IMG/VR virus record: IMGVR_UViG_3300031669_000001
Span: 186,001 to 250,000 of that record
DNA length: 64,000 bases
Reading direction: 5' to 3' (one strand)
Below the pieces are notes generated by a model, which was not told the origin of the DNA, made no database searches, and worked only from the letters and a program-made list of their open reading frames with translations. A program made the position numbers and the translations under genes. Of the stretch, positions 41,246-55,402 are shown piece after piece (within the stretch, counting starts at the first letter, position 1; each line of letters opens with the position of its first letter).

Positions 41246-41316
41246 TAGCAGAGAATAAAACGTCGATGGGTATGGTTTCATTGTGAGCGAAGTAACCCGT
41301 GACTGCGCAGCTGCTA
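41246..41316 (-). ncRNA. Y-RNA-like handle family, copy 1 (minimal)
   Basis: TAGCA-GCTGCG...GTTACTTCG...TTATTCTC-TGCTA. Confidence 0.7.
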
Positions 41317-41390
41317 TGGTCCTTTCTGCAAGAATCGGACTTGCATCTATCGATTATCGGTCGATTGCTCTACCACTGAGCTAAGAAAGG
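41317..41390 (-). tRNA. tRNA-Ile(GAT), C33
   Basis: Loop CCGATAA, CCA. Confidence 0.8.
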
Positions 41391-41535
41391 ATTTGATCCT
41401 TGGCATCTTCTAAACCTTTGAAGAAGGCTTCGTTTGTGCCAGTGAATTCTATTCGTATAACTTTCATCTTCAAAACTTCCTGAAGGTACTTATCTTATAT
41501 CGAACCGCTTCTTTCGTGTTATGCTAAATGTACAG

Positions 41536-41612
41536 TGGGGTGAGCGACGGGAATTGAACCCGCTCTAAAAGCTTCACAGGCTTCGTTGCTGAACCATTAC
41601 AATACGCCCACC
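41536..41612 (-). tRNA. tRNA-His(GTG)
   Basis: Loop CTGTGAA, G-1, CCCA. Confidence 0.85.
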
Positions 41613-41630
41613 CCGATGTACACTTTAATT

Positions 41631-41704
41631 TGGTAGTCCCGGTCGGAATCGAACCGACGTGTTTCGCTAATCGGGCGAACACCTTACCATTAGATGACAG
41701 GACT
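41631..41704 (-). tRNA. tRNA-Ile(GAT), C33/U37
   Basis: Loop CCGATTA, CCA. Confidence 0.75.
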
Positions 41705-41716
41705 ACAACGATTGAA

Positions 41717-41787
41717 CGACATACGGGGAATCGAACCCGCGATCTCCGGCGTGAAGGCCAGGGTTTTGTCCGTTAAACTACACATCT
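41717..41787 (-). tRNA. Glu-like tRNA with a 6-nt anticodon loop (CTTCAC), no CCA
   Basis: D and T arms intact; stem CTGGC/GCCGG. Confidence 0.5.
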
Positions 41788-41870
41788 CAGATCTTTTTTC
41801 AAAACTTGCTGGAATCGATTAAAATCTGTCAATCGTGATCATATCCACGGCAGCAACCGCTTCAATAATT

Positions 41871-41945
41871 TGGCCGATTCGGTTGGATTTTCACCAACAC
41901 CTTCCCACCTTGTAGTGGGCCCTCTAAGAATTGAACTACGAATCG
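41871..41945 (-). tRNA. atypical tRNA of undetermined anticodon
   Basis: CGATTCG/CGAATCG-G-CCA; CCCAC-TACAAG-GTGGG; T loop TGAAAAT. Confidence 0.5.
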
Positions 41946-41949
41946 ATTA

Positions 41950-42025
41950 TGGTGGGTACCGTGGGATTCGAACCCACATCTTACGGATTAAGAGTCCGCC
42001 GTAATAGCCATTATACTAGATACCC
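41950..42025 (-). tRNA. tRNA-Lys(CTT)
   Basis: Loop CTCTTAA, CCA. Confidence 0.88.
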
Positions 42026-42122
42026 AAATAAGATCGTGTGGATTCGAACCACCACCGCGCTTAGAGCAGCACTCATCACGCTCTTATGGATTTTACCGGG
42101 AGCCATACCGGAAGTACGATCT

Positions 42123-42199
42123 TGGTCGGAATGGAGGGATTCGAACTCTCGACATCTTGCTCCCAAAGCAAGCGCACTACCAGGCTGTGCTACATTCCG
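42123..42199 (-). tRNA. tRNA-Pro(TGG)
   Basis: Loop TTTGGGA, CCA. Confidence 0.9.
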
Positions 42200-42267
42200 A
42201 TGTGCAACTCTCATCTAAGGTTGAATCATCCTGTCACCAGACCTGACCAATCCGAAAAGTTGTTGCA

Positions 42268-42342
42268 TGGTACACCCAACCGGATTCGAACCGGTATTTC
42301 CTGATTGAGGGTCAAGCGACCTAGCCGTTAGTCGATGAGTGT
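42268..42342 (-). tRNA. tRNA-Glu(CTC), C33
   Basis: Loop CCCTCAA, CCA. Confidence 0.8.
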
Positions 42343-42361
42343 AAAGTGTTTCTCATTATAG

Positions 42362-42420
42362 TCAATTCCTTTTGTTTGAATCGATAAAAGCATTATAACA
42401 CGATCTACAGAAAAGTACAC
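42362..42420 (-). repeat. about 60-bp early promoter/SD cassette, near-identical at 48379-48438 and partial at 46881-46919
   Basis: Shared GTTTGAATCGATAAAAGCATTATAACA.GATCTACAGAAAAGTACAC. Confidence 0.85.
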
Positions 42421-42540
42421 AACTATTTAAGTGAAAACGAAATTATTTTTGATAAACTCTGCAGTCGAATCTTCATTCGTGTACAACTTGAACTCGTTAG
42501 CGCCCATGTTGAAGTTCAATGTATCACCTAGTGTACATTT

Positions 42541-42618
42541 TGGTCAGGATGGTCGGATTCGAACCGACGGTCTCTCACTTCCGAGGCGAGTGGATTAGCC
42601 AGACTTTCCCACACCCTG
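42541..42618 (-). tRNA. tRNA-Pro(CGG)
   Basis: Loop CTCGGAA, CCA. Confidence 0.85.
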
Positions 42619-42620
42619 AT

Positions 42621-42742
42621 TGGTGGACATCACGAGAATCGAACTCGCTATCTTCAGGCGAAGCATATACCAAAGTTTACACTCATCCAGAGACCCCCAT
42701 TTGGTGGAGATTACGGGAATCGAACCCGCATACCTGATGCCC
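42621..42742 (-). ncRNA. two tandem tRNA-Ala-like pieces with swapped acceptor strands
   Basis: Two T arms and two ACCA ends; GGGCATC pairs 7/7 with the distal GATGTCC. Confidence 0.6.
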
Positions 42743-42744
42743 AT

Positions 42745-42819
42745 TGGTGGAGGCCGAGGGAGTTGAACCCTTCTAGACAAGATACTTGCAAGGCATCTCC
42801 GCAGCCCGCTGCTGCCCCC
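42745..42819 (-). tRNA. tRNA-Ala(TGC), atypical D arm
   Basis: G3:U70, loop CTTGCAA, CCA. Confidence 0.75.
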
Positions 42820-42829
42820 ATGAAACAAG

Positions 42830-42902
42830 TCCGATGTCCTAAGCCACTATGACGACCTCCAGCATTACCCGCTAGGCCGGGATTCGAACCCGGGTTTTCG
42901 GA
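42830..42902 (-). ncRNA. circularly permuted tRNA mimic
   Basis: TCCGA-T arm-closed acceptor-D arm-TCGGA. Confidence 0.7.
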
Positions 42903-42978
42903 AGGTGGAGGATGGGAGGTTCGAACTCCCGACCTATAGCTTGCAAAGCTACCGCTCTCCCAGCTGAGCTAATCCCCC
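42903..42978 (-). tRNA. tRNA-Ala(TGC)
   Basis: G3:U70, loop TTTGCAA. Confidence 0.9.
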
Positions 42979-42983
42979 ATCGT

Positions 42984-43051
42984 GACGGTGCTTTCCCACT
43001 AAGCTACTACCGATTTCTCAGTAGACAGGATTTGAACCATGTGTCTCCGCC
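42984..43051 (-). ncRNA. circularly permuted tRNA mimic
   Basis: GGCGG-T arm-CTACTGA GAAA TCGGTAG-TA-D arm-CCGTC. Confidence 0.75.
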
Positions 43052-43125
43052 GGTGCCCCCACACGGAATCGAACCGCGGTATCCTGATTACAAAACAGGT
43101 GTAATGACCATTATACGACAGGGGC
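43051..43125 (-). tRNA. tRNA-Thr(TGT)
   Basis: Loop TTTGTAA. Confidence 0.85.
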
Positions 43126-43131
43126 TTTATT

Positions 43132-43207
43132 TGGTACAGACGATTGGGATCGAACCAATATCCTCGGGGTTTCAAGCCGATACATGAACCATCATTGTTA
43201 CGTCTGC
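43132..43207 (-). tRNA. tRNA-Phe(GAA)
   Basis: Loop TTGAAAC, CCA. Confidence 0.75.
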
Positions 43208-43210
43208 ATT

Positions 43211-43319
43211 AAGTAGAGTAAAAGTTGTTTAGAGCTATTGCCACCTTGGCACCCCTGCTCTTGAAGAGCAGGGGATTAGAATCGAACTAACGAAGTATCT
43301 CTTAACATTGCAACTACTT
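43211..43319 (-). ncRNA. Y-RNA-like handle family, copy 2 (T-acceptor-D module)
   Basis: AAGTA-GTTGCA...GATACTTCG, T loop TTCGATT, 10-bp closed stem, TTTTACTC-TACTT. Confidence 0.75.
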
Positions 43320-43392
43320 GGTGGTGAGTGAAGGTATCGATCCTTCGTCTAAGCCTTATGAGAGCCTTGTTCTACCTTTGAACTAAATCACC
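43319..43392 (-). tRNA. tRNA-Met(CAT)
   Basis: Loop CTCATAA, CCA. Confidence 0.8.
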
Positions 43393-43416
43393 ACGATAGC
43401 TTTACCTATCGGAATA

Positions 43417-43492
43417 CGGTGGGTGCACTCGGTGTCGAACCGAAACTCTTAGGGTAAAAGCCTAATGTGCAGAGCCGCTACACTATACACCC
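43417..43492 (-). tRNA. tRNA-Lys(TTT)
   Basis: Loop CTTTTAC. Confidence 0.82.
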
Positions 43493-43499
43493 AAACTTC

Positions 43500-43591
43500 G
43501 GGTGGGACTGGTGGGATTCGAACCCACGATGTGAGCTTTCGCATGTACCGGATTAAAAGTCCGGTGTCTTCAACCTCTTGACTACAGACCC
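43500..43591 (-). tRNA. tRNA-Lys(TTT) with long variable arm
   Basis: Loop CTTTTAA, about 20-nt variable region. Confidence 0.78.
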
Positions 43592-43681
43592 ATTAAACAG
43601 CTTTGGAATCAGAGGTTGATTTACCAAAGCCATGGGTAGAAAATCGTTCCATGGCACATACTCCTTTTGTTGAAATTAAAT

Positions 43682-43756
43682 TGGTCCGCCCACGTGGAAT
43701 CGAACCACGGACCGGAGTTTAGAAGACTCCTGTTATATCCACTTAACTATGGGCAG
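43682..43756 (-). tRNA. tRNA-Arg(TCT)
   Basis: Loop CTTCTAA, CCA; 5' end overlaps the endonuclease stop codon. Confidence 0.88.
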
Positions 43757-44379
43757 AAACATTTTCTTCCTTTTGACCACCCTTGATCTAGGTAAGTCTG
43801 AAGAATATCTTTCTTGATCTTGATGGTTTTCTGTTGCTTTTCTGAGAAGATCCAGCAAGATCCAAATTGAGAGTTTCTATCACCGGATTGAGCAGATCTC
43901 ATTTTAGCTTTCGTATCTTCAGAGTGAGTCTTTCCGAACATCGGATTAGAGTCTGCTGAATTCAAATCGCTTAATTTTGCTCTTGATTCATATGAATGAG
44001 ATTTCCCTTGGAATTTTCCCTTGCCCATATTTGATTTTCTTGCAGCATTACTTGCATTGGACTCTATGCAGAACCCATTTCTTCTAATCTTTGTGATGTA
44101 TTCAAATCCACCGGTGCCGCCTCTTCTGAGGTTGTAGACATCATCACGAGAAAGAAACTCATCACTAACAATTTCTTTCTCCCTCGCATACATAGCTTCC
44201 GAATTCTCGAAAGTCTCAAGTATGACTTTTTCAAAGTTTTCGATCCCGTATCTTTTGATAGCACGACCGATAACTTTTCCAGAGCCCATGTACCCATCAT
44301 CAAAATTCTTGGTCTTATGAACTCCAACGTAGATTTTTCCATTCACCATGTTGGTGATTTGATAGATGCAATATTTCAT
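43747..44379 (-). CDS. GIY-YIG homing endonuclease (Seg-like) with NUMOD3 repeats
   Basis: CIY.ITN..NGKIYVG, YMGSG, YNL..GG.GG, GK.HS repeats. Confidence 0.9.
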   Translation of the reverse strand: MKYCIYQITNMVNGKIYVGVHKTKNFDDGYMGSGKVIGRAIKRYGIENFEKVILETFENSEAMYAREKEIVSDEFLSRDDVYNLRRGGTGGFEYITKIRRNGFCIESNASNAARKSNMGKGKFQGKSHSYESRAKLSDLNSADSNPMFGKTHSEDTKAKMRSAQSGDRNSQFGSCWIFSEKQQKTIKIKKDILQTYLDQGWSKGRKCFCP

Positions 44380-44408
44380 GCTTCTATTTATGGAGAATCC
44401 ACAACGTG

Positions 44409-44477
44409 TTGCGAACCCGGAATCGAACCGGCCTGATGGGTTATGAGCCCAACATGCGCCACTACATCTTTATCGCG
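44409..44477 (-). tRNA. initiator-like tRNA(CAT), atypical, no CCA
   Basis: C1xA72 mismatch, GGG/CCC anticodon stem. Confidence 0.6.
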
Positions 44478-44550
44478 GTCTCTCCGGCTGGACTCGAACC
44501 AGCATCGTCTGCGTTCCAAACACAGTGAACAACCTTTATCCCACAGAGAG
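44476..44550 (-). tRNA. tRNA-Pro(TGG)
   Basis: Loop TTTGGAA. Confidence 0.8.
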
Positions 44551-44565
44551 AAGGGTACTACTAAT

Positions 44566-44643
44566 TGGCCCTGTTGAATGGGTTCACACCATTATCACGC
44601 CGCCTAGGTGGCAGCTAGCATTGTAGTTTATGCTTACAACAGG
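44566..44643 (-). tRNA. atypical tRNA, nominally Arg(CCT), A33
   Basis: CCTGTTG/CAACAGG-G-CCA, loop CACCTAG, T loop TGTGAAC. Confidence 0.55.
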
Positions 44644-44647
44644 ATTG

Positions 44648-44723
44648 TGGCGTTCGCGGAGGGGATTGAACCCTCTTCTGGAGATTGAAAGTCTCCTGTC
44701 CTAACCATGTAGACGACGCGAAC
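44648..44723 (-). tRNA. tRNA-Glu(TTC)
   Basis: Loop CTTTCAA, CCA. Confidence 0.87.
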
Positions 44724-44918
44724 ATGAATGTAGCCTAAGCACCGACAGATAGGTTGCGATCCTACCCTGTTGCTCGAGTATGACACTGTCGTGGCATTCT
44801 CTTCTTCACAAGAGACCTCAGTTGTGACTTACGATCTCTTGATCATCTACATTGAGACTTCGTTACACTCGTACACCGAGCAATGACCGACGAGATAAAC
44901 TCGACGATCACCGAAGTC

Positions 44919-44992
44919 TGGCGGGCCAGAGGGGTGTCGAACCCCCGCGTGAAAATAGACAGTTTTCCATACTACCGTTATATGACTGACCC
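44919..44992 (-). tRNA. tRNA-Asp(GTC)
   Basis: Loop CTGTCTA, G73, CCA. Confidence 0.83.
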
Positions 44993-45046
44993 GTGGGATG
45001 CTTCAATTTTTATAGACGCGGAAGCAAAGGTCGCGCCATTGTTTGG

Positions 45047-45131
45047 AGTCAGAGAAGATGTCGGCAAGAGTGACTGGGCGATGCCCAAGTTTTCCATAAA
45101 CGAAGTAACTCTCATTCCTATGCAACTGACT
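45047..45131 (-). ncRNA. Y-RNA-like handle family, copy 3 (single hairpin payload)
   Basis: AGTCA-GTTGCATAG...GTTACTTCG...TCTTCTC-TGACT. Confidence 0.72.
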
Positions 45132-45206
45132 TGGTACACCTGCAGGGAATCGAACCCTGTATTCCAGCTTGAAGGGCTGGCCACTCAACCAATTGTATTC
45201 AGGTGT
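45132..45206 (-). tRNA. tRNA-Glu(TTC), C33
   Basis: Loop CCTTCAA, CCA. Confidence 0.8.
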
Positions 45207-45209
45207 GCA

Positions 45210-45284
45210 AGGCTCCCCAGGCTGGATTCGAACCAACGACCAAGTGATTAACAGTCACCTACTCTACCACTGAGCTACTAGGGA
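45210..45284 (-). tRNA. tRNA-Asn(GTT)
   Basis: Loop CTGTTAA; overlaps the endonuclease stop codon. Confidence 0.88.
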
Positions 45285-45880
45285 ATTGTTACAAAATCTT
45301 TTGCTATTTGAATCCACTGTTTTGGATCTTTGTACATCTTTTGCCATTCTATTCTAAGTACTTTCCATCCAAAATCTTTCAAAAATTTATCTTTTCGTTC
45401 ATCACGTTCTCGATATTCTTGAAATCGTTTGTGTTGTTCACCGTCGATCTCAATGCAGAGACTTTTATGAACCCAGGCAAAGTCAAGAGAGAAGTTGCCT
45501 AAGGAATATTCGCGAACATAATTTTTATCTTCAAACTCGTTTTCGATAACTTTCATGAAAAACTTTTCTGGATAACTTGGCATGTTGTTCCACCGAGATT
45601 TACCAATATTCCAAGCTCGTCCTTCAGAATGAGCTTTCTTCATTGATTCGCTTGTTAGCTGTTTAGTTTTGGAAGAAGGAATATGACCAGGTTTTCCCTT
45701 AAGTGCGATAGAAATTTTATTGGACATCTTCCAGATTCTTGGATCAGATTTATTCAAACCTTTAGTCCAAGAATCTTTACCAGCAAAGGGTTTATGATCT
45801 TTACCAGAACCGTGTGTTCTCCAAATATGAGTTCCAATACCCATTTTAGAAAATTCTTTATCGCAAAATGTACATTTCAT
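45278..45880 (-). CDS. putative homing endonuclease (zinc finger + DUF559/Vsr-like domain)
   Basis: CxxC..H....H, S.PE, DFAW, IEIDG.QH, RD..KD, GW.VLR; start set to MKCTFC. Confidence 0.8.
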   Translation of the reverse strand: MKCTFCDKEFSKMGIGTHIWRTHGSGKDHKPFAGKDSWTKGLNKSDPRIWKMSNKISIALKGKPGHIPSSKTKQLTSESMKKAHSEGRAWNIGKSRWNNMPSYPEKFFMKVIENEFEDKNYVREYSLGNFSLDFAWVHKSLCIEIDGEQHKRFQEYRERDERKDKFLKDFGWKVLRIEWQKMYKDPKQWIQIAKDFVTIP

Positions 45881-45917
45881 GTTGAATTGTAACACAGTTG
45901 AGAAAATAAGAACATTA

Positions 45918-46011
45918 TGGCTCCCCCAGCAGGATTCGAACCTGCATACCGTTCGCGACGGACTACGAGTGGTTAACAGCCACTTCACTTGCCAGTTATG
46001 TGTACGGGGGA
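45918..46011 (-). tRNA. tRNA-Asn(GTT) with long variable arm
   Basis: Loop CTGTTAA, variable hairpin CCGT/ACGG, CCA. Confidence 0.8.
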
Positions 46012-46016
46012 ATGTT

Positions 46017-46091
46017 TGGCGGTGTTCAGAGGAGTTGAACCTCAATCAAAAGGCCTCGGTGGCCTCCGTGCTAACGTTACACTAAAACACC
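46017..46091 (-). tRNA. tRNA-Arg(CCG), A33
   Basis: Loop CACCGAG, CCA. Confidence 0.65.
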
Positions 46092-46093
46092 AT

Positions 46094-46168
46094 GGGACCC
46101 CCGCACTGGAATCGAACCAGTATCTAAACGTTCGTAGCGTTTCGTCGTGTCCATTGGACTAACGGGAG
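46094..46168 (-). tRNA. tRNA-Arg(ACG)
   Basis: Loop CTACGAA. Confidence 0.85.
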
Positions 46169-46170
46169 TT

Positions 46171-46246
46171 TGGTGCACGGTGAAGGACTCGAACCTTCAT
46201 AATCAATCTTGTAAGGATTGCGGCTGACCTCTCACACCAACCGTGC
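46171..46246 (-). tRNA. tRNA-Val(TAC)
   Basis: Loop CTTACAA, CCA. Confidence 0.82.
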
Positions 46247-46451
46247 ATTGAGCAGTGGACAACTTCATCCACTGCACGTGGCTAGATGAACTACTCTGCC
46301 ATGTAAGCGGTCGTTTTTTCACTCCACAAGAGGAGCTTCATCCCGATTAATGTAACGGCAACCGTTACAAGCCACGCCCTCATTCGTCTAATTTTAAAGT
46401 GCCGACAGCGATCGCGTTCCGCATTGCACTTTTTACTGCTTTGAAAACAAC

Positions 46452-46474
46452 CGAGGAACCTTGAAGGTTCCTCG
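46452..46474 (-). terminator. terminator-like hairpin in front of the tRNA array
   Basis: CGAGGAACCTT/AAGGTTCCTCG followed by GTTGTTTT. Confidence 0.6.
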
Positions 46475-46500
46475 CTTTTGGATTACTAATTTAGGTTCTC

Positions 46501-46632
46501 TTAGTTCTGAGTTCCTGCTCCAATTACGAGGTTCTTTACTCTTTCATTCACGGCTGGCTGATTTACCTCACGGTTAATCCTGCAATCGCGTGCATGTTGT
46601 GTAAAGGGTTTCATTGTTATGGTAGTTTTCAT
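46501..46632 (-). CDS. 43-aa leader-like peptide
   Basis: Starts just after TATAAATA (46638-46645) and ends just before the hairpin. Confidence 0.4.
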   Translation of the reverse strand: MKTTITMKPFTQHARDCRINREVNQPAVNERVKNLVIGAGTQN

Positions 46633-46942
46633 GATTTTATTTATATGACAGCAAAAAATTCCAAATAAGTTAAGGTTCAAAGAACCATTAAGAGTGCTGC
46701 TTAGTTTTCAGCTTTGTAGTGAAAGTACATCACTGATCTTCAGACTAGCACTTTTAATGTTTCCTTCAAAGAAGCATTAAGGATGATTTTAAGTATCTTA
46801 GCTCTGAATCAGTAATCCACTTTAGCGTGGAACTTTATTCATCGTCAGGGTTACATACGATCATCTTTAATGTTTCCTCATCGATAAAAGCATTATAACA
46901 CGCTCTTCCAAAAAGTACATTACTTTGTGCAACTATTTTCAA

Positions 46943-47092
46943 AAGTACTCTGCAGGATAATCTCTCCGCTCTACCATTTGAGCTACCCAGCAGCGTTTGG
47001 CTACCGAGGCTGGATTCGAACCAACATCTGACTATGATCAATGATCCCATGCACGGAGGTCATTGACTGCAAAATTATCCTGCAAAGTACTT
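46943..47092 (-). ncRNA. permuted tRNA mimic closed by a 19-bp terminal stem
   Basis: T arm GTTGG-TTCGAAT-CCAGC, stem CTCGGTAGC/GCTGCTGGG, TA, D arm GCTC-AAATGGTA-GAGC. Confidence 0.7.
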
Positions 47093-47096
47093 GAGG

Positions 47097-47308
47097 TGGC
47101 GCTCTCGCAAGGATTCGAACCTCGACCTTGATGCCATTCACACGTGTTCGATAGGAAGTGGTAGACACATACGTGTCACTAACTACTAACGTGCTATCTT
47201 CATCAACATTACCCCGTGCCTTACCAATGCCTTTGATATTACGTTTGCACAACTCGTTTGACCCACAACAGTTCGCACGAGAATCTCAGGTTAGTCGGAT
47301 ACGAGAGC
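47097..47308 (-). ncRNA. 212-nt RNA with tRNA-like acceptor stem, T arm and CCA
   Basis: GCTCTCG/CGAGAGC-G-CCA; CGAGG-TTCGAAT-CCTTG. Confidence 0.7.
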
Positions 47309-47969
47309 GTAACCTCAAGTACTTTGCAGAAGAAACTCGTCTGAGGATTCGAACCTCTTAAGAGTGTGCGCACACCATACACCGAAATGTACCCCGTATA
47401 TCCACCACGGGCAAAGCTCTTTGATAAAACGGCTGCAGACCGGTAAATCTAGAGTAAGTTTCTTCAGCAAAGCACTTCAAATTTTATCTAACGGAGGTAG
47501 TTCGTCCGTTAGGGTAACTCATTTGAGTTACCTTTTAGCTCCAGAGGTAATTCGTCTGGACGGCAAGGGTGGTTAATCCCTTCTGTTCAAATTCTCTTTC
47601 GTCGACGGTCTGAGGATTCGAATCTCAGATTTGCCGCTCCGATGGCGCCATCTCGGCGAAAAAGAACTTTGTGAGGCTGCTTCAGCGAACGTTGTAGTGC
47701 ATGCGCTCAACATCCGACTTCCAGGATCCGTGCATCGCATGCGAGCCGATGCCTGGTATGCTTTTACATTACAAAAGCAGCTTTACAAAAGACGCCGTCA
47801 CGAACATTATACCGAAGAAAACCCATCCAACAAACGCGTCTTCCTTGTCGGTTTCCATAATCAACTGTCCAAGCAAAAAACCTGCTTACTAACCTAAATA
47901 GCACCAAGAGTTTCTCTGCCAAGCCATTGTAAAAATTGAATTATTTCTCTCATGCTTTACTCGTTGCAT

Positions 47970-48311
47970 CTACTGACAAACAGAAACAGTTGAGCACTTT
48001 TTGATAATTTCTTCAGTATTAATTGCGTCTACGTTACCTTTTGCTTGCGCGACCTGATCTTCATGATCTCCCCCCAGCTTACTTGCTGGAATGAGGAACA
48101 AGAAAACGGTAGCTGCATCAACATTTGCAGAATGATCCTGTGCAGCAGACGATACAGCAAGTTGCGTCTTTGCATTACACATAGCAGTTGATAACTCAGA
48201 GCACGAAAGGTTCGTGTATTTCTGCGGCGATACATAATCTGCATGAATACTCTCGGGACGAGTGGCACAACCAGCTAATAAAATTGCTGCTATAACTAAA
48301 ATCTTTTTCAT
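47970..48311 (-). CDS. lipoprotein
   Basis: Lipobox LLAGC. Confidence 0.8.
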   Translation of the reverse strand: MKKILVIAAILLAGCATRPESIHADYVSPQKYTNLSCSELSTAMCNAKTQLAVSSAAQDHSANVDAATVFLFLIPASKLGGDHEDQVAQAKGNVDAINTEEIIKKCSTVSVCQ

Positions 48312-49520: not shown

Positions 49521-49611
49521 ACATCTTCAAAGACGCTAAGCTCTTTAAGCTTCATAGATATTTGTCATCTCTTTGATTGACAACCAATGTTGATAAACTC
49601 CTGCACCAGTT

Positions 49612-49935: not shown

Positions 49936-49938
49936 GAT

Positions 49939-50367
49939 TTAGTCCTTCATATCCGTGATCGTAATGTTGAAGAAGACTTCGTCATTACGATTCTTTGCTT
50001 GTTTTATTGCATTCTTTACGCCTAACAGATTGCTATTTTTCTCAACGAGAGGGTTAACTGTTAGATCCATGATCTTGACGCTAGTACCAGAACGAACGGC
50101 TGCAAAGATAGCGTTCATTCCATCCTCTTCAACTATCGTAAGCATAGAGATGCGGCCTTCTGTAAAACGCTTGAAGGCTTTGCTTGGATCGTTAGATTGA
50201 TTTGATTGCTGGTGTTGGAGAAGCGTAAGTCTCTCAGAACTGAGATCAACTCCGATTGCGTTGCCGATCGATTCGAAGACGGTATCAAGTTGATCTAGCG
50301 GAACTCCCTGTGATCCGTCCGTAAAGAACTGATCGATCAAACTTGTTTTGATTTCTGATAACTTCAT
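49939..50367 (-). CDS. hypothetical protein (MKLSEI N-terminus)
   Basis: GATAAATA upstream. Confidence 0.65.
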   Translation of the reverse strand: MKLSEIKTSLIDQFFTDGSQGVPLDQLDTVFESIGNAIGVDLSSERLTLLQHQQSNQSNDPSKAFKRFTEGRISMLTIVEEDGMNAIFAAVRSGTSVKIMDLTVNPLVEKNSNLLGVKNAIKQAKNRNDEVFFNITITDMKD

Positions 50368-50434
50368 TGGATAAACCTTTCGAAAATAGCATTGCTCGAA
50401 AGTATTTATCGTTATTGATTCGAATTAGTTTCTA

Positions 50435-51496
50435 TTATCGTCGAATGACAGTTGTACCTTCGCTAAACGTGTCAGGCCTAAAGTTTGCAAGGTCGAGAGT
50501 TGAGATCCCGAGGGCAACTGTTACATCATACAGAATGGCTGTGACCTCTGCGGCGCTAAGTTTTCCTACCTTCATGTATTCTAGCAAGGCATCTGAGGTT
50601 TTGCAGTAAGCTATCAGGTTTTGGTTTGGCACCTGCTTTATTTTGGATTCTAGATGTGCTATCTGCTTTAAAGCTTCTTCAACATTCTCTGTATTTTGAA
50701 TCGTGAGAAATTCGATCTTAGAGTTCAACGATTCATTAGCTTTTTCGAGAGCTGTTATCTGATCGAGGGCTTCAGTTAAACCGTCATTGGCAGCTCGCAT
50801 AGTGCTGACAAATTGTTTTGTCATCTTGATCTGATGCTTCATTCGAAGCATGATCGTTTGATACGCGTGTTGGTACTCAGGGAACAACTTCATCGCGGTC
50901 TTCAACATAGACAAGAATATCGTCTCTGCTTCTGACCCGTACTGATCCATCTTGTCGACGGTGAACACATCGATCATGTGTTCAAGGTTATCGCATCGAT
51001 CAAGACCCTTAACGATAGATGCCGCTATCAGTTTCGCGATGTCTCTGATGTAAGTTTCTTTGTTCTTGTGTTCACCAGCGAATTTTTTGGTCAGCGCCCA
51101 GGTGTTTACGCTTACCTTTTCACCAAAGATTTGTGTGATCTGCTCGGTGGGTACGTCGTGATCTTCTTGAGAATCGTGAAGGAGCGCGATGACGATGCAA
51201 AGTTCTTCAATGTCGTCTGGAAGACCTTTGAGTTGAGTGACAGATAGGGCGATGCGGACTTGATGATGAAGGCTCGGAGTTACCTTGTCCTTGCGGAATC
51301 GCTGTTCAGCTGGAAGTCTGAACTCCAACTGCTCTATGAATCCAAGCGCTCGAATGCCTTGGACGTAGCCTTTGCCGAGCATGTAATACTTGAGCGCAGT
51401 CTTCTCTCGTTGAAACTGAAGTGCGTGTCGTTGTAAAACAGCTTTCATTGAATCAACGTCAGCGCCAGATTGATCGAGTATGTTAAAGTCAGTCAT
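50435..51496 (-). CDS. RelA/SpoT-type HD hydrolase with coiled-coil C-terminus
   Basis: RKD..TP...H, ALLHD..ED, LTK, K..DR.DN. Confidence 0.8.
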   Translation of the reverse strand: MTDFNILDQSGADVDSMKAVLQRHALQFQREKTALKYYMLGKGYVQGIRALGFIEQLEFRLPAEQRFRKDKVTPSLHHQVRIALSVTQLKGLPDDIEELCIVIALLHDSQEDHDVPTEQITQIFGEKVSVNTWALTKKFAGEHKNKETYIRDIAKLIAASIVKGLDRCDNLEHMIDVFTVDKMDQYGSEAETIFLSMLKTAMKLFPEYQHAYQTIMLRMKHQIKMTKQFVSTMRAANDGLTEALDQITALEKANESLNSKIEFLTIQNTENVEEALKQIAHLESKIKQVPNQNLIAYCKTSDALLEYMKVGKLSAAEVTAILYDVTVALGISTLDLANFRPDTFSEGTTVIRR

Positions 51497-51549
51497 AGAT
51501 TCTCCAATAGATGAATCATTATAACACACTTTATACAGAAAGGAAACAG

Positions 51550-51574
51550 AAAAAGGGGAGATTTCTCTCCCCTT
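51550..51574 (-). terminator. intrinsic terminator
   Basis: AAGGGGAGA/TCTCCCCTT plus U run. Confidence 0.7.
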
Positions 51575-51593
51575 ATGAAACTCCGGTGAACCC

Positions 51594-52319
51594 TTATTTC
51601 TTGTCAGATGGTGTGTTTGCGGTCACTGACTTATTTTTGATGTCATCATAAAGCTTAGACATGTCTACTCCAGCCGCTGCAGAGCACGCTCCGTCTGCGT
51701 AGTTGAATGAAGCTCCGCGCATCGATGAAGTTGCAAAGTTCACAGCTGTCATCGCGTCTAAAGTTCCAGTCTTGGTGTAGTCAAACGTCACTGAGTTGCT
51801 AGCCTTGATCCCCATTGAGGTTCCAACTGAACGAGCATCCATGTTGGTTCCTAGAAACAGAACTTCCCAGCCGTGTTCACCTTCAACGCCGCTGATCAAT
51901 TCCTTAACCTTAGCGTAGGTGTATTCTTTGCTGGCGTTCTCTTGTCCATCGGTCAAGATAGCTACGATCGTCTTCGTGTTCTTTGGATTTTCATCCTTGA
52001 ACGTGGAGATAGTTCTACCAACAGCGTCATAGAGAGCTGTGTAACCACGCGGTTGGAATGTGCTTGCATTTAGATCAGGCACGTTTTCGAGAGGAACGTT
52101 GTCGTGAACGACAAGATACTCATGGTCGAATTGAACCAACGATACTGTTACCTTACCTGGAACTTCCTTCTGACCTGCCAAGAAGGCATTGAACCCGCCG
52201 ATCGTTTCTTCCTTGATAGAGCTCATTGAACCCGAGCGATCGAGAATGAAGAAGATGCGAGCGTTAGCAGGCTTTTTGGATTTGGATTTTTTCTTTGGGG
52301 TTATCATTTTGTCTGTCAT
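51594..52319 (-). CDS. vWA domain protein
   Basis: DRSGSM, T.LYDA, LTDG.ENAS. Confidence 0.88.
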   Translation of the reverse strand: MTDKMITPKKKSKSKKPANARIFFILDRSGSMSSIKEETIGGFNAFLAGQKEVPGKVTVSLVQFDHEYLVVHDNVPLENVPDLNASTFQPRGYTALYDAVGRTISTFKDENPKNTKTIVAILTDGQENASKEYTYAKVKELISGVEGEHGWEVLFLGTNMDARSVGTSMGIKASNSVTFDYTKTGTLDAMTAVNFATSSMRGASFNYADGACSAAAGVDMSKLYDDIKNKSVTANTPSDKK

Positions 52320-52329
52320 TTTGTTCTCC

Positions 52330-53115
52330 TTAATAGATGATTTGTAGTGACGCGCCGCAGTTGGAACAGAATTTAGCGGAGGTTGATTTGCTGAGATATC
52401 CACACGAGTCGCATTCTGTCTTGCTGCGGGTGGTGACTGCGTTAGAAACGGATTTTCCTAGATGTTCTCCAAGCAGACGTAAGATCATCACGTGCTTGTG
52501 AGGTTCAAGTGCAAAGTTAGCAACCGAATTGAACTCCTGATCTGATACAGATCCAGGGGCTGTAATTCCAACACAGTTAGTGTATGCTCCAGGTATAGCA
52601 GCTGTGGAATTACTTGCTCCTATCGCACTGCTGTTTGCGCAAAAACCTCTAGCCATCAACGGGGATGGATCTCCAGTTGAACCGGCTGAATTCCAGAACG
52701 GAGGATAATTCGGTGGGGGATAAGGTTGATGCCAATTTGGAGTTACAGTCGTGATCGTTTGGATCACCTTTTCAAATTGAAACTCAACTCGAACTAAGCC
52801 ATCATCGACTCTGATACCTCGATGCTTTTCTATCGCTGAATTGCGCGCGATAAATTTGAATCGATTTCCTCGATCTAGATTGCCGTTCTTGATGAACCGT
52901 TCTAACTCTATTTCATCGTTAGGATCAACGACTAAAGATACTCCCTGCGTCGCATCGACTCCATCAATCTCGATCTTAACAGAAGCCCTGACAGAGTTCT
53001 TGTTCTTGATAAAGATGCTGTATTCGGTTTGAAATGGGAGGTAAACCTGATCTTCGAATTCTCGAAGTGCTTTGCCGTTAGCCTTGATGGCCACAGCGAG
53101 TTTATTGCTGTACAT
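52330..53115 (-). CDS. hypothetical protein with C-terminal double zinc ribbon
   Basis: CxxCG...KFCxxCG. Confidence 0.75.
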   Translation of the reverse strand: MYSNKLAVAIKANGKALREFEDQVYLPFQTEYSIFIKNKNSVRASVKIEIDGVDATQGVSLVVDPNDEIELERFIKNGNLDRGNRFKFIARNSAIEKHRGIRVDDGLVRVEFQFEKVIQTITTVTPNWHQPYPPPNYPPFWNSAGSTGDPSPLMARGFCANSSAIGASNSTAAIPGAYTNCVGITAPGSVSDQEFNSVANFALEPHKHVMILRLLGEHLGKSVSNAVTTRSKTECDSCGYLSKSTSAKFCSNCGASLQIIY

Positions 53116-53216
53116 AATGCTTCTCCTGCTGGGCGACTGACTGGCGTCCAATTACATAAGTCAGTTAAGCTCTTGATAAATTACACACCGAGCCAAGTTG
53201 TGTTCTGTACTTCTAT

Positions 53217-53510
53217 TTATACTCTCATCGCGCTTCCAGAAATCATTCCTGATAGCACGCTATCTAACCACCAACGTGGAAACTTTTCATCTTGATATAA
53301 TTCAAACTTGAACAAATTTCCTAACTCGATGTCTTCTTTCCACATCTCGACGTTCAAGTTCAACATCTTCTTACCGTGCATGAAGCCGTTGTTTTGACGG
53401 CATTTCGATCCACCATAAGATTCAAAGTTGTAAAGCTCGATCAAACATTCATCAGAAAAATCTAAGACATGTTCCCATTCTAAGGCGAACATTCTGTAAA
53501 TCTCAGTCAT
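53217..53510 (-). CDS. hypothetical protein
   Basis: 97 aa ORF. Confidence 0.6.
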   Translation of the reverse strand: MTEIYRMFALEWEHVLDFSDECLIELYNFESYGGSKCRQNNGFMHGKKMLNLNVEMWKEDIELGNLFKFELYQDEKFPRWWLDSVLSGMISGSAMRV

Positions 53511-53721
53511 TCGCAGAAACTTCGGCGAACAGCCTTTTACTGAGTGTCGTGGAATCCCATTTTGGTTGCCGCGTTTAGCATGTACATTTGACCTCTTACT
53601 TAAACAAGCGGCTCATTACCGCTGTCATTTTATCAATCCAACCTAACAGCAGACACACCAGAAACAGGATTACTCCAATGAGCATTCCAATTCCGAGGGC
53701 GGCTGCTGTCGAATTCATCGC

Positions 53722-53910
53722 TTAGATGAGGGTGGAAGCCTTGTAGCCCATGCTGTTCCACAGGATACGAGTCTTGCCGGCCGAGGTTGTTTGTTGTGCA
53801 CGAACTGTTACTTTCGAAGTGCGCTTTTGGATTGCTGTTTTGCCTTCGCGATAAACGCGAGTTCCTGCAGCGATCGAGATTTTCTTACCTACGAGATTTG
53901 TCTTTGACAT
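53722..53910 (-). CDS. small basic protein
   Basis: SD, 62 aa. Confidence 0.6.
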   Translation of the reverse strand: MSKTNLVGKKISIAAGTRVYREGKTAIQKRTSKVTVRAQQTTSAGKTRILWNSMGYKASTLI

Positions 53911-53970
53911 AATGAATTTCCTTATGAGTATGTTATGAAAAGAGGAATCAAATGATTCCTCGTTTGCTAC

Positions 53971-54174
53971 TTAAACAGCTTGGATATTGGAAGCTTGTGC
54001 TCCCTTTTGTCCTTGAGTCACGTCAAAGGAAACCTTCTGGCCTTCTTTGAGAGATTTGAAACCGCTCATGTTGATCGCAGAGAAGTGTGCGAACAAATCG
54101 TCACTACCTACATCTGGGGTAATGAAGCCAAAACCTTTAGCGTCATTGAACCACTTTACTGTACCTGTTGCCAT
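53971..54174 (-). CDS. cspA: cold-shock protein
   Basis: [21 protein letters not shown]. Confidence 0.96.
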
Positions 54175-54227
54175 TCTTATTTCTTTCTAAATTGAACAAT
54201 CACCGAAATTGATGATTGGGTAAAACA

Positions 54228-54568
54228 ATAAACTAGAGATGAGGGCAGATTATGCTCTTACCAAGCCTTTCGGCCGTCTTCCCTTTCGGGGTCGACATGG
54301 TAGCTTGAATTAACCATCCTCAAGCTTAGGACCACCTAACCGCACATGATCGGACATGCGCAACCAGCATGTTAAGCACCTAGTTTAGTCCAGGCTACGA
54401 CCCAGTTTATCGTCTGGGAACTATTCTGTGATCACCACAGACAGTGGGTAAACTATTTTCACACTCTTGCTTGGTTAGGTCGAGTGCTATCTTAAAGTTG
54501 CCCTTAAGAAGTAGTTCCATCAGCTTCACAAGTTGTCGAAGTATCACAATCTAATGCAGCTAGTTTAT
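54228..54568 (-). ncRNA. Y-RNA-like handle family, copy 4 (about 280-nt structured payload)
   Basis: ATAAACTA-GCTGCATTAGATTGT-GATACTTCG...ATAATCT-GCCCTCATCTC-TAGTTTAT. Confidence 0.7.
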
Positions 54569-54640
54569 CGGTAGCAGCAGGTGGAGTCGAACCACCGGAG
54601 ATAGGCTTATGAGACCTATTTGAATCCCATTCTCACTGCA
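54569..54640 (-). tRNA. tRNA(CAT), miniature D arm
   Basis: Loop CTCATAA, T arm intact. Confidence 0.6.
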
Positions 54641-54641
54641 A

Positions 54642-54766
54642 CATTGATGAGAAAAAGTTGATAGAGGCTTTTTGTGGCGGCTGTCCTACCACTGGACGAC
54701 TAGTCAGGAATCGAACCTGAGTTCGCTGCTTTGGGCGAAGTAACTCTTATCTACGCAACATCAATG
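54642..54766 (-). ncRNA. Y-RNA-like handle family, copy 5 (T arm then D arm)
   Basis: CATTGAT-GTTGCGTAG...GTTACTTCG, TCAGG-TTCGATT-CCTGA, GTCC-AGTGGTA-GGAC, TTTTTCTC-ATCAATG. Confidence 0.78.
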
Positions 54767-54916
54767 GTGCCATACAATCAGAGTCAACCAACTGCATGAC
54801 ATTTCAGCATTTTACCGGAGCTACCCGGCTTTCCTTCGAGGATCTTTAATACCGCCCTTTCGGGTGATGGTACAAGAATTGCTGAACCCCTAGTGGAAGT
54901 GCCCTTCCACACCGTT

Positions 54917-54990
54917 TGGAGCGGGTAGAGGGAATCGAACCCTCCACTGAACCTTGGCAAGGTTCCGAGTTACCACTACACCACACCCGC
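54917..54990 (-). tRNA. tRNA-Gly(GCC)
   Basis: Loop TTGCCAA, CCA. Confidence 0.88.
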
Positions 54991-55105
54991 TAGATGAACA
55001 TTCAAAGAATGTCATCCGTCTCCACCATCTAATGATCAGCTCCACTAGAAGAGTTACCACCTAAGGTACCATCCAATGATCGGCTCCATTGGAAGAGTTA
55101 TAAGT

Positions 55106-55236
55106 TGAATCGAGAAAGAGGCGAAAAGAGAGATTTTAGGGTTTTGCCATTAAACTATACCCACTAGGGGCAGCCGGAATCGAACCGACGTCACTCGTTT
55201 AAGAGACGAAGTAACTCTTTTCTGTGCAACGATTCA
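55106..55236 (-). ncRNA. Y-RNA-like handle family, copy 6 (T-acceptor-D module)
   Basis: GTCGG-TTCGATT-CCGGC, TGCCC/GGGTA, TA, GTTT-AATGGCA-AAAC inside the handle. Confidence 0.8.
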
Positions 55237-55311
55237 GGTGCGGGATGAGAGAATCGAACTCTACTATTCCTGGGTGGAAGCCAGGCGTGTAACCAATGAC
55301 ACCTATCACGC
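55236..55311 (-). tRNA. tRNA-Gly(TCC)
   Basis: Loop CTTCCAC. Confidence 0.75.
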
Positions 55312-55316
55312 AAAGG

Positions 55317-55402
55317 GATGGAGAAAAAGTCGGTAAGGGAGACTGGCCGAAGCCAAGGTTAACAAAAAGTAAACGAAGTAGCCCTAATCCTATGCAACCA
55401 TC
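55317..55402 (-). ncRNA. Y-RNA-like handle family, copy 7
   Basis: GATG-GTTGCATAG...GCTACTTCG...TTTTTCTC-CATC. Confidence 0.72.

What the first reader, a model, noticed from the sequence alone, without database searches (positions are those of the whole stretch)
41246..55402. Seven-member modular ncRNA family: constant handle with interchangeable payloads (Y-RNA-like)
Seen: seven elements (41246-41316, 43211-43319, 45047-45131, 54228-54568, 54642-54766, 55106-55236, 55317-55402) share the layout stem-G(T/C)TGC(A/G)...inner helix-GHTACTTCG-[payload]-inner helix-pyrimidine tract ending CTC-stem. The terminal stems differ in sequence but always pair, which is covariation. Payloads range from nothing, to a hairpin, to a permuted T-acceptor-D tRNA module (3 copies), to about 280 nt. 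Established: bacterial YrlA Y RNAs join a Ro60/Rsr-binding helix to such a permuted tRNA module. Inference: an RNA adaptor library docking on one protein. No Ro60/TROVE gene is visible in this window.
Basis: partly seen in the sequence, partly recalled or inferred. Interest (0 to 1): 0.82.

Follow-up and report, generated by a model that had tools for sequence, protein, structure and literature searches.

The report
Phage Y RNAs hidden among tRNAs
Seven small RNA genes scattered through a giant soil phage's tRNA cluster are Y RNAs, the partner RNAs of the Ro60 protein that this phage also encodes; the kind is known, but the number of copies, their range of cargo domains and their placement far from the Ro60 gene are unusual.

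Summary
All seven elements lie on the minus strand, like the about 42 tRNAs. Each starts 0-3 nt after a tRNA's encoded CCA end. They share: terminal stem, YUGCRYAG, inner helix, (U/A)UACUUCG, payload, inner helix, YCGNC..UUYCUC, terminal stem.

A covariance model (R2) finds six of them and nothing else in the 345-kb genome. The seventh (E4, 262-nt payload) fits by eye.

The Y-RNA reading is supported:
- The phage encodes a Ro60/TROVE protein about 92 kb away, similar to the solved Thermus-phage Ro60.
- R2 gives 145 hits in 53 of 80 phage TROVE loci and 301 hits in 80 bacterial TROVE loci, all on the TROVE strand, as tandem arrays beside the gene.
- In three 5-Mb bacterial genomes every hit lies in the rsr locus.
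- Both helices covary (about 90% paired against 37-49% when slid).
- The handle holds a diverged GNCGAA(N)G motif and the conserved YUAY of YrlA.
- E2 and E6 carry permuted T/acceptor/D modules; E5 carries T and D arms.
- A soil metatranscriptome shows strong transcription.

Rfam YrlA's threshold is not reached.

Verdict: a new variant of a known kind (multi-copy, unlinked from Ro60, embedded in tRNA arrays, one fused to the cspA leader). Ro60 binding is inferred, not shown.

The parts
41246..41316 (-). E1: handle-only Y-RNA-like element (17-nt loop as payload). It starts directly after tRNA-Ile (41317-41390).
   Evidence: R2 43.7 bits, E 8e-10; stem UAGCAG/CUGCUA, CUGCGCAG, GGG/CCC, UUACUUCG
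43211..43319 (-). E2: handle plus permuted tRNA-like module (T arm, 10-bp acceptor-like hairpin, D-like arm). It lies between tRNA-Met (43319-43392) and tRNA-Phe (43132-43207).
   Evidence: R2 46.6 bits; sequence read
45047..45131 (-). E3: handle plus an A/U-rich single strand and a short GC hairpin followed by AGU (same payload type as E7 and as L053 in a 58-kb phage). It lies 3 nt after the tRNA at 45135-45206.
   Evidence: R2 57.6 bits; alignment A3
54228..54568 (-). E4: handle closing a 262-nt structured payload. It lies 1 nt after tRNA-Met (54570-54640) and 53 nt upstream of the cspA start codon.
   Evidence: Handle parts read by eye. MFE -106.2 kcal/mol, z = -3.21. A metatranscriptome contig covers 53776-54549. 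R2 does not detect it.
54642..54766 (-). E5: handle plus V-like hairpin, T arm and D arm (no acceptor-like hairpin). It lies 1 nt upstream of tRNA-Met (54570-54640).
   Evidence: R2 51.5 bits; YrlA 17.6 bits on the T-D part
55106..55236 (-). E6: handle plus full YrlA-type module (V hairpin, T arm, acceptor-like hairpin, D arm). It starts directly after tRNA-Gly (55237-55311).
   Evidence: R2 59.1 bits; Rfam YrlA 25.5 bits over model positions 26-82
55317..55402 (-). E7: handle plus the E3-type payload (UUCG-capped hairpin followed by AGU). It lies between tRNA-Gly 55404-55477 and tRNA-Gly 55237-55311.
   Evidence: R2 53.0 bits
53971..54174 (-). cspA-like cold-shock protein gene (67 aa) directly downstream of E4. 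It is on the same metatranscriptome contig as E4.
   Evidence: ORF; Rfam cspA 55 bits, mainly the coding part and terminator; contig 12
35258..55477 (-). tRNA gene array (about 40 tRNAs, interrupted by homing-endonuclease genes) that hosts all seven elements. Each element begins 0-3 nt after a tRNA's encoded CCA.
   Evidence: ARAGORN and Rfam tRNA; Pfam GIY-YIG/NUMOD3, DUF559, HNH

Best explanation
The seven elements are paralogous Y RNAs of the bacterial/phage YrlA-YrlB kind, the noncoding partners of the phage's own Ro60 (TROVE plus vWA) protein.

Shown here:
- A conserved, covarying two-helix handle.
- Exclusive, same-strand genomic linkage of that handle to Ro60 genes in many phages and bacteria.
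- A Ro60 gene in this genome.
- tRNA-like modules in three copies.
- Abundant transcription of the E4-E7 stretch.

Inferred:
- The handle is the Ro60 docking site. It comprises the terminal stem, an asymmetric internal loop carrying UGCRYAG on the 5' side and YCGNC..UUYCUC on the 3' side, the inner helix and UACUUC.
- The payload decides what each Ro60-RNA particle does.
- The permuted tRNA modules (E2, E5, E6) engage a tRNA-elbow-binding factor.
- The single-strand-plus-hairpin payloads (E3, E7) could tether an exoribonuclease such as host PNPase, as in the Ro60-Y RNA-PNPase complex formed with phage phiLo's Ro60 and RNAs.
- The handle-only E1 could simply gate the Ro60 ring.
- E4 places a handle around a 262-nt domain in the cspA leader.
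- Because each element starts right after a tRNA's CCA, and most are followed by another tRNA, they are probably transcribed with the tRNA array and released by the tRNA-processing enzymes.
For: - Own genome: TROVE protein at G000:C1 331733-333283(-). It is similar to the solved phage Ro60, 9KOP/9L5Y, E 2e-19. The DxSxS site of the vWA domain is invariant in alignment A5.
- R2 hits in the own genome are exactly six, all in the array.
- Phage TROVE loci: 145 of 145 hits on the TROVE strand, in 53 of 80 loci, 1-8 per locus. 124 lie upstream (median 280 nt from the gene) and 21 just downstream.
- Bacterial TROVE loci: 301 hits, all on the TROVE strand.
- Three about 5-Mb bacterial genomes: all 9 hits lie inside the rsr locus.
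- Seven of ten motif-selected viral records encode TROVE, often adjacent.
- Covariation: 90.4% and 89.7% of cells paired against 37-49% when partners are slid; score 0.82-0.91 against 0.18 or less; 12 of 13 and 13 of 13 pairs with double changes.
- Family consensus GGYG-HAG equals the published GNCGAA(N)G motif in 41 of 145 members. The invariant UACUUC contains the published YUAY / 23-UA-24 (PMC4201824; bioRxiv 10.1101/312249).
- CcrColossus, a phage reported to have YrlA, has 8 R2 hits upstream of its Ro60 gene. Three of them also score 30-42 bits with Rfam YrlA.
- phiLo Ro60 binds upstream RNAs of stem-loop-stem shape, and mutation of their CGAA motif weakens binding 3-4 fold (PMC12135203).
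- Transcription: soil metatranscriptome X2 covers 53776-55393 at depth 36-101 with 0 differences. Flanking genes are at 0-3.6, and the DNA run is flat at 162-189.
Against: - No element reaches Rfam YrlA's gathering score (best 25.5 against 69 bits), and the hits cover only the tRNA-like part.
- The literal GNCGAAN0-1G motif is absent (U replaces the first G; Y replaces an A).
- The elements lie about 92 kb from the Ro60 gene, whereas published YrlAs lie within 4 kb.
- No binding data exist.
- The covariation counts come from alignments fitted by the model.
- Metatranscriptome contigs do not show clean full-length RNAs. The E4 contig starts at element position 20, and E7 at position 10. The first 41 nt of E6 are not covered. 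E4 is contiguous with cspA.
- No RtcB gene is present.
Confidence: 0.8

Rival explanations
1. E4 alone is not a free Y RNA. It is a cis-acting 5' leader of the cspA mRNA that happens to carry, or exploits, a Ro60 handle, for example to let Ro60 control cspA translation or stability.
For: - A single metatranscriptome contig runs from E4 position 20 through cspA to 53776 at depth 101.
- A second, about 92% identical variant in a salt-marsh metatranscriptome ends at the same place.
- E4 ends only 53 nt before the cspA start codon.
- cspA genes are known for long regulatory leaders (Rfam RF01766).
Against: - The leader part aligns poorly to the Rfam cspA thermoregulator; the score comes from the coding part and terminator.
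- A contig across two features does not prove a single transcript.
- The 9-bp closing stem and the complete handle argue for the same module as in the other six.
Confidence: 0.3
2. The elements are tRNA-array spacers: processing cassettes or decayed and permuted tRNA genes that guide RNase P/E/Z cleavage. They would have no relation to Ro60.
For: - All seven abut tRNAs.
- Three contain tRNA arms.
- The tRNA model gives 18.6 bits on E6.
- Published models derive Y RNAs from dimeric tRNA transcripts (bioRxiv 10.1101/312249).
Against: - The same handle occurs next to Ro60 genes in genomes where no tRNA array is present, always on the Ro60 strand, and nowhere else in three 5-Mb genomes.
- Four of the seven have no tRNA arms.
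- Most tRNA junctions in this array (about 35) have no such element.
Confidence: 0.07
3. The tRNA-like copies act on their own as decoys for host tRNA-cleaving defence nucleases, independently of Ro60.
For: - The E6 V hairpin has a 7-nt loop CUCUUAA on a 5-bp stem, like a Lys anticodon arm.
- Large phage tRNA sets are often discussed as a counter to tRNA-targeting defences (my own knowledge).
Against: - This does not explain the conserved handle, the four copies without tRNA arms, or the Ro60 linkage.
- The acceptor end is closed, so the RNAs are not tRNA substitutes.
Confidence: 0.05
4. The shared motif is a DNA-level signal (a phage promoter such as a -35-like TTGCA plus TACTTC, or the ends of a miniature mobile element) rather than an RNA.
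For: TTGCA resembles a -35 hexamer. The spacing to TACTTC is fixed at 11-13 nt. Short inverted repeats flank each copy.
Against: - The spacing is too short for a sigma-70 promoter.
- The flanking repeats differ in every copy yet always pair, and both helices show compensatory changes across 145-301 homologues.
- RNA contigs include sequence upstream of the would-be -10 element.
Confidence: 0.02

Closest known systems
YrlA (Rfam RF02553; Salmonella Typhimurium, Mycobacterium smegmatis, 22 phages; PMC4201824)
   Same: - A stem formed by the 5' and 3' ends flanks an internal loop with a Ro60-binding motif.
- A conserved YUAY follows the stem.
- E2 and E6 have a permuted tRNA-like domain (V, T, closed acceptor hairpin, D); E5 partly.
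- A Ro60 ortholog is in the same genome.
- The wider family found here lies beside Ro60 genes on the same strand.
   Different: - The 5' motif is UGCRYAG, not GNCGAA(N)G.
- Scores are 17.6-25.5 bits against a gathering score of 69.
- The genes lie about 92 kb from Ro60, inside tRNA arrays.
- There are seven copies, four of them without a tRNA-like domain.
YrlB (S. Typhimurium) and Yrn1/Yrn2 (Deinococcus radiodurans)
   Same: They are further Ro60-bound RNAs in the same cell. They share the Ro60-binding motif but carry a different or no tRNA-like module, which is the same 'one handle, several payloads' logic as E1, E3, E4 and E7.
   Different: No sequence relation was tested here. Those RNAs are encoded beside rsr. 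Their binding is shown experimentally; binding of the elements here is not.
Yrl1/Yrl2 of Thermus phage phiLo with phiRo60 (PMC12135203; PDB 9KOP, 9L5Y)
   Same: - They are phage-encoded Y-like RNAs of stem / internal loop / stem shape that bind a phage Ro60.
- This phage's TROVE protein matches that Ro60 at E 2e-19.
- The complex also binds host PNPase.
   Different: - They lie directly upstream of the Ro60 gene.
- They carry a CGAA motif.
- There are two copies.
- I could not fetch the phiLo genome to test R2 on them.
Y-RNA arrays upstream of Ro60 in Caulobacter phages CcrColossus and CcrPW
   Same: - Eight tandem copies have the same handle (UGGCGUAG ... UACUUCG ... GUUCC) and mixed payloads (hairpin or tRNA-like).
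- They are the nearest named phages by Ro60 similarity (30%).
   Different: They sit in one block next to the Ro60 gene, not dispersed among tRNAs. One copy is annotated in GenBank as tRNA-Gln.
Vertebrate Y RNAs (Rfam RF00019)
   Same: They are modular: the lower stem binds Ro60 and the rest binds other proteins. Several paralogues exist per genome, and a pyrimidine-rich tract is present.
   Different: No detectable sequence match at E<=10. They have a different Ro60-binding helix (GGUCCGA with a bulged C) and no tRNA-like domain.

Membership tests
Bacterial/phage Y RNA (YrlA type) | A Ro60/TROVE ortholog is encoded in the same genome | tested here: met
   516-aa ORF at G000:C1 331733-333283(-); Pfam TROVE 2.7e-25; PDB 9KOP/9L5Y at 2e-19
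Bacterial/phage Y RNA (YrlA type) | Encoded within about 4 kb of the Ro60 gene on the same strand (criterion of PMC4201824) | tested here: not met
   E1-E7 lie about 92-106 kb from the TROVE gene, and no R2 hit lies near it. The criterion is met by the wider family: 53 of 80 phage loci and the bacterial loci, all on the same strand. The closest relative, G010, is also unlinked.
Bacterial/phage Y RNA (YrlA type) | The 5' and 3' ends pair into a stem that flanks an internal loop, followed by a second helix | tested here: met
   Seven different perfectly paired stems. Covariation over 31 and 145 homologues: about 90% paired against 37-49% slid.
Bacterial/phage Y RNA (YrlA type) | GNCGAAN0-1G motif near the 5' end | tested here: not met
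   The elements here have UGCGUAG, UGCAUAG, UGCACAG, UGCGCAG, UGCAAUG and UGCAUUAG. The same alignment columns read GGCGAAG in 41 of 145 family members, so the motif is homologous but diverged.
Bacterial/phage Y RNA (YrlA type) | Conserved YUAY after the stem (23-UA-24 kink in the crystal structure) | tested here: met
   UUAC, AUAC or CUAC in all seven. UACUUC is near-invariant in the family (at least 136 of 145 per column).
Bacterial/phage Y RNA (YrlA type) | tRNA-like domain: T arm, closed acceptor-like hairpin, D arm | tested here: inconclusive
   Present in E2 and E6. E5 has T and D arms only. Absent in E1, E3, E4 and E7. 68 of 145 phage-locus family members carry a T-loop motif.
Bacterial/phage Y RNA (YrlA type) | Rfam RF02553 gathering score (69 bits) | tested here: not met
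   Best 25.5 bits (E6). CcrColossus copies reach only 42.3. None of 17 TROVE loci reaches the threshold.
Bacterial/phage Y RNA (YrlA type) | Physically bound by Ro60 | not testable with these tools
   Needs pull-down or gel shift
Bacterial/phage Y RNA (YrlA type) | Expressed as a discrete stable small RNA | tested here: inconclusive
   Strong RNA coverage of E4-E7 against silent flanks and flat DNA.
Ro60 (the protein partner) | TROVE/HEAT ring plus vWA domain with a DxSxS metal site | tested here: met
   Pfam TROVE; weak DUF7788 (vWA-like) hit; D341, S343 and S345 invariant in A5; near full-length match to the solved phiRo60. No structure was predicted here.

The most novel reading that the evidence does not exclude
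This jumbo phage, and its 360-kb relative, have moved their Y-RNA genes out of the Ro60 locus into the tRNA arrays. A whole library of Ro60 adaptors would then be made and trimmed by the tRNA-processing machinery.

The library would hold handle-only, hairpin, tRNA-mimic and 262-nt payloads, one of them built into the cspA leader. Each payload would aim the single phage Ro60 at a different RNA or enzyme.

Family-wide, payloads would be mimics of cellular RNAs. Besides tRNA, a 23S rRNA nt 1910-1943 mimic is found in Bacteroidota arrays.
Probability: 0.35. Interest if true: 0.75.

Novelty: new variant of a known kind. Interest (0 to 1): 0.55.

Why it matters
Ro60 and Y RNAs are conserved from bacteria to humans, but what the bacterial and phage particles do is still poorly understood. 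Few Y RNAs have been found, because searches relied on the tRNA-like domain and on closeness to the Ro60 gene.

This window suggests two things:
1. A handle-based model recovers many more Y RNAs. These include ones without a tRNA-like domain, arrays of up to eight or more per locus, and ones far from Ro60.
2. A phage can carry a graded set of payloads on one handle. That gives a natural set of variants for asking which payload recruits which partner.

The handle consensus derived here could be turned into a family model that covers what Rfam YrlA currently misses.

Tried and rejected
- Rfam at E<=10 over 35000-56500: nothing on the handles, only weak YrlA hits on tRNA-like parts.
- First regex scan for stem plus YTGCR plus CTC: too crude, it missed several true copies.
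- BLAST of the array region and of E4 against GenBank phages and E. coli genomes: only tRNA matches or nothing.
- BLAST of 53900-55500 against the three nearest viral records: only tRNA or handle fragments, so no orthologues of E4 for covariation.
- Relatives of the neighbouring 202-aa protein in IMG/VR: none.
- MAFFT alignments of all seven, or of mixed copies: the 3' ends were misaligned. I bootstrapped a model from three well-aligned copies instead.
- Pairing between GUUG of the 5' loop and CRAC of the 3' loop: it fits E2, E3, E5 and E7 but not E1, E4 or E6, and no covariation was seen, so I dropped it.
- E4 payload as an rRNA mimic or as the ~220-nt Bacteroidota payload class: only chance words against E. 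coli rrn, and nhmmer finds only the handle.
- E4 as a cspA thermoregulator: the UTR part aligns poorly.
- Covariation of the E4 payload from the salt-marsh variant: the difference list was truncated. One compensatory pair and several disruptions of the MFE model; not informative.
- Handle search with filters off in the ORF-poor 46200-48100 region: nothing.
- L083 and L048 from the pattern scan turned out to be false candidates.
- phiLo genome: not found in the phage collection listing, so R2 could not be tested on Yrl1/Yrl2.
- Two review papers could not be read.

Full report
CONTEXT. The window is bases 186001-250000 of a 345,069-bp IMG/VR phage record with direct terminal repeats, rated complete. 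A soil metagenome run holds it. All long ORFs and about 42 tRNA genes lie on the minus strand. The tRNA array is interrupted by homing-endonuclease genes (GIY-YIG/NUMOD3, DUF559, HNH).

OBSERVATION. Read on the minus strand, the seven elements share one layout:
- a terminal stem of 5-9 pairs whose sequence differs in every copy;
- YUGCR(Y)AG;
- an inner helix;
- (U/A/C)UACUUCG;
- a payload;
- the return strand of the inner helix;
- a YCGNC-type box and a pyrimidine run ending CUC;
- the return strand of the terminal stem.

TACTTCG alone is not enriched (11 against 6.5 expected). YTGCR placed 11-13 nt upstream of it with a closing stem occurs only at these seven sites in the genome. Every element starts 0-3 nt after the encoded CCA of a tRNA. 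E2, E5 and E7 are also followed within 1-5 nt by another tRNA.

MODEL AND COVARIATION. MAFFT could not align the 3' ends of all copies. I therefore built a first covariance model from E3, E7 and a homologue in a 58-kb phage. I used it to collect 31 copies from this window and from viral contigs found by a DNA pattern, and rebuilt the model as R2.
- On the 31 copies, 90.4% of cells pair, against 42-49% when partners are slid by 1-3 columns. Twelve of 13 pairs show changes on both sides.
- On 145 independent copies the figures are 89.7% against 37-46%, with 13 of 13 pairs changed on both sides.
- These alignments were fitted by the model, which favours the structure. The seven different but perfectly paired stems in the window are visible without any model.
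- R2 finds E1, E2, E3, E5, E6 and E7 (43.7-59.1 bits) and nothing else in the whole genome at E<=1.
- E4 is missed because of its 262-nt insert, but it shows every handle part by eye.

LINK TO Ro60. The genome has one, about 92 kb away. It is a 516-aa protein with Pfam TROVE at 2.7e-25 and a near full-length match (E 2e-19) to the solved Ro60 of Thermus phage phiLo. The DxSxS site of the vWA domain is conserved.

Several searches tie the handle to TROVE genes:
- Seven of ten viral records picked only by the handle motif also encode TROVE, several directly beside the RNA.
- Going the other way, I fetched 80 phage TROVE loci. R2 gave 145 hits, all on the TROVE strand, in 53 loci, with 1-8 per locus. 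Of these, 124 lie upstream at a median of 280 nt and 21 lie just downstream.
- In 80 bacterial TROVE loci, mostly Bacteroidota, R2 gave 301 hits, again all on the TROVE strand. They form tandem arrays, in places interleaved with tRNA genes.
- In three bacterial genomes of about 5 Mb, all nine hits lie inside the rsr locus.

False positives would fall on both strands and anywhere in a genome. This linkage is the main evidence.

RELATION TO PUBLISHED Y RNAs. Chen et al. (PMC4201824) define YrlA by four features: a GNCGAAN0-1G motif near the 5' end, a conserved YUAY, a tRNA-like V/T/acceptor/D domain, and a position within 4 kb of Ro60 on the same strand. They report 355 YrlAs in 254 bacteria and 22 phages.

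The family consensus from the 145 copies is as follows:
- 5' side: stem, U-G-G-Y-G-(N)-H-A-G-R, helix, U-UACUUC.
- 3' side: helix, Y-C-G-N-Y-U-(N)-G-U-U-C-C, stem.

The columns GGYG-HAG read GGCGAAG, the published motif, in 41 of 145 copies. This phage has UGCRYAG. UACUUC contains the YUAY, whose UA makes the kink in the YrlA crystal structure (bioRxiv 10.1101/312249).

Caulobacter phage CcrColossus is cited as having Y-like RNAs (PMC12135203). It has eight R2 hits in the 1.3 kb upstream of its Ro60 gene. Three of them also score 30-42 bits with Rfam YrlA.

No copy anywhere reached Rfam's gathering score of 69, so the Rfam model is narrower than this family.

For phiLo, Ro60 binding of two upstream stem-loop-stem RNAs was shown. 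Each CGAA nucleotide contributes 3-4 fold to affinity, and the particle also binds host PNPase (PMC12135203).

PAYLOADS.
- E1 is handle-only, with a 17-nt loop.
- E3 and E7 share an A/U-rich single strand, a short GC hairpin and AGU. The same type occurs next to the Ro60 gene of a 58-kb phage.
- E2 has T, acceptor-like and D arms.
- E6 has V, T, acceptor-like and D arms (YrlA 25.5 bits over model positions 26-82).
- E5 has V, T and D arms only.
- E4 encloses 262 nt that fold better than shuffles (z = -3.21). It has no detectable relatives or rRNA, tRNA or cspA-leader similarity.

EXPRESSION. A soil metatranscriptome holds 53776-55393 with no differences at word depth 36-101. Flanking protein genes are at 0-3.6, and the DNA run is flat at 162-189. 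This is transcription rather than DNA carry-over.

The contigs do not outline clean full-length elements:
- The E4 contig starts at element position 20, with an adapter read-through there. A 92%-identical salt-marsh variant ends at the same spot. The contig continues through cspA.
- E7 coverage starts at position 10.
- One contig joins 55312 to 55195, skipping tRNA-Gly and the first 41 nt of E6.

MECHANISM. The most likely reading is that the handle docks the phage Ro60 and the payload sets the partner or target. The RNAs would be co-transcribed with the tRNAs and released by tRNA-processing enzymes.

The handle's conservation, its covariation, its linkage to Ro60 genes and its transcription are shown. 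Docking, payload partners and processing are inferred from the Deinococcus, Salmonella and phiLo systems.

The phage has no RtcB but has two RNA-ligase-family genes.

NOVELTY. Y RNAs with a Ro60-binding module and a variable module, also in phages, are known. Four things differ here:
- the diverged 5' motif;
- seven copies with four payload types;
- the location inside tRNA arrays far from Ro60, shared with the 360-kb relative, which has five copies in its tRNA region and none near its Ro60 gene;
- a handle wrapped around a large domain in the cspA leader.

I rate it a new variant of a known kind, with interest 0.55.

Noticed in passing
L289:6532-6755, L262:6382-6604, L241:5470-5705, L221:4576-4793, L237:4681-4902 (Bacteroidota rsr loci): A recurrent class of handle RNAs about 220 nt long. 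Its payload begins with 34 nt identical to E. coli 23S rRNA nt 1910-1943, and a second 23S word (UCGGGUAAG, nt 1948-1956) follows about 105 nt later. This looks like a 23S rRNA mimic on a Ro60 handle. I found no description of it in the papers I could read.
   Followed up: partly
window 55195/55312 (minus strand): One metatranscriptome contig (depth 36.7) joins the 5-nt trailer after E7 directly to position 42 of E6. It skips tRNA-Gly (55237-55311) and the first 41 nt of E6. The upstream end is exactly the RNase P site of the tRNA. The junction is not seen in the DNA run. It could be template switching at real RNA ends, a ligation product, or a variant genome.
   Followed up: no
window about 46950-47079 (minus strand): A further permuted tRNA-like module (T arm, acceptor-like hairpin, D arm). 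It gives the best YrlA hit in the genome (30 bits at 46966-47031). It is closed by an 11-bp stem TGCAGGATAAT/ATTATCCTGCA, with UUUGCAG after the stem but no UACUUCG and no pyrimidine tract. R2 does not match it.
   Followed up: partly
window 46250-48000 (minus strand): About 1.7 kb without an ORF of 100 aa or more. It contains three exact GGTTCGAATCC T-loop-like motifs and a repeated (A/G)AGTACTT word flanking structured segments. These may be further unclassified RNAs.
   Followed up: partly
window 54991-55105 (minus strand): Two tandem copies of a hairpin of the form CYARTGGAGCYGATCATTRG between E6 and tRNA-Gly(GCC). The stretch is covered by the metatranscriptome contig.
   Followed up: no
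window 42031-42122 (minus strand): A 92-nt gap in the tRNA array with an 8-bp acceptor-like stem, a T arm and GUACUUCCGG near the 5' end. It scores 22 bits with the tRNA-Sec model, and ARAGORN does not call it. It may be an unusual long-arm tRNA.
   Followed up: no
L130:2089-2156 (Caulobacter phage CcrColossus NC_019406, 109217-109284): The feature annotated as tRNA-Gln upstream of the Ro60 gene overlaps one of the eight handle RNAs (GGCGUAG ... UACUUCG, then a T arm). It is probably a Y RNA rather than a tRNA.
   Followed up: partly
L253 and L215 (Bacteroidota rsr loci): Downstream of rsr, handle RNAs alternate with ordinary tRNA genes. This is the same interleaving as in this phage, and it fits the published idea that Y RNAs arose from dimeric tRNA transcripts.
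   Followed up: no
window 16917-16992 (minus strand): ARAGORN calls a tRNA with anticodon CUA (amber suppressor, labelled Pyl) far from the main array. Rfam tRNA gives 44 bits.
   Followed up: no
L135 (IMGVR_UViG_3300037424_000895): The closest TROVE homologue (67% identity) matches over 2,251 nt of DNA for a 516-aa query, so that gene may carry an insertion (intron or intein).
   Followed up: no
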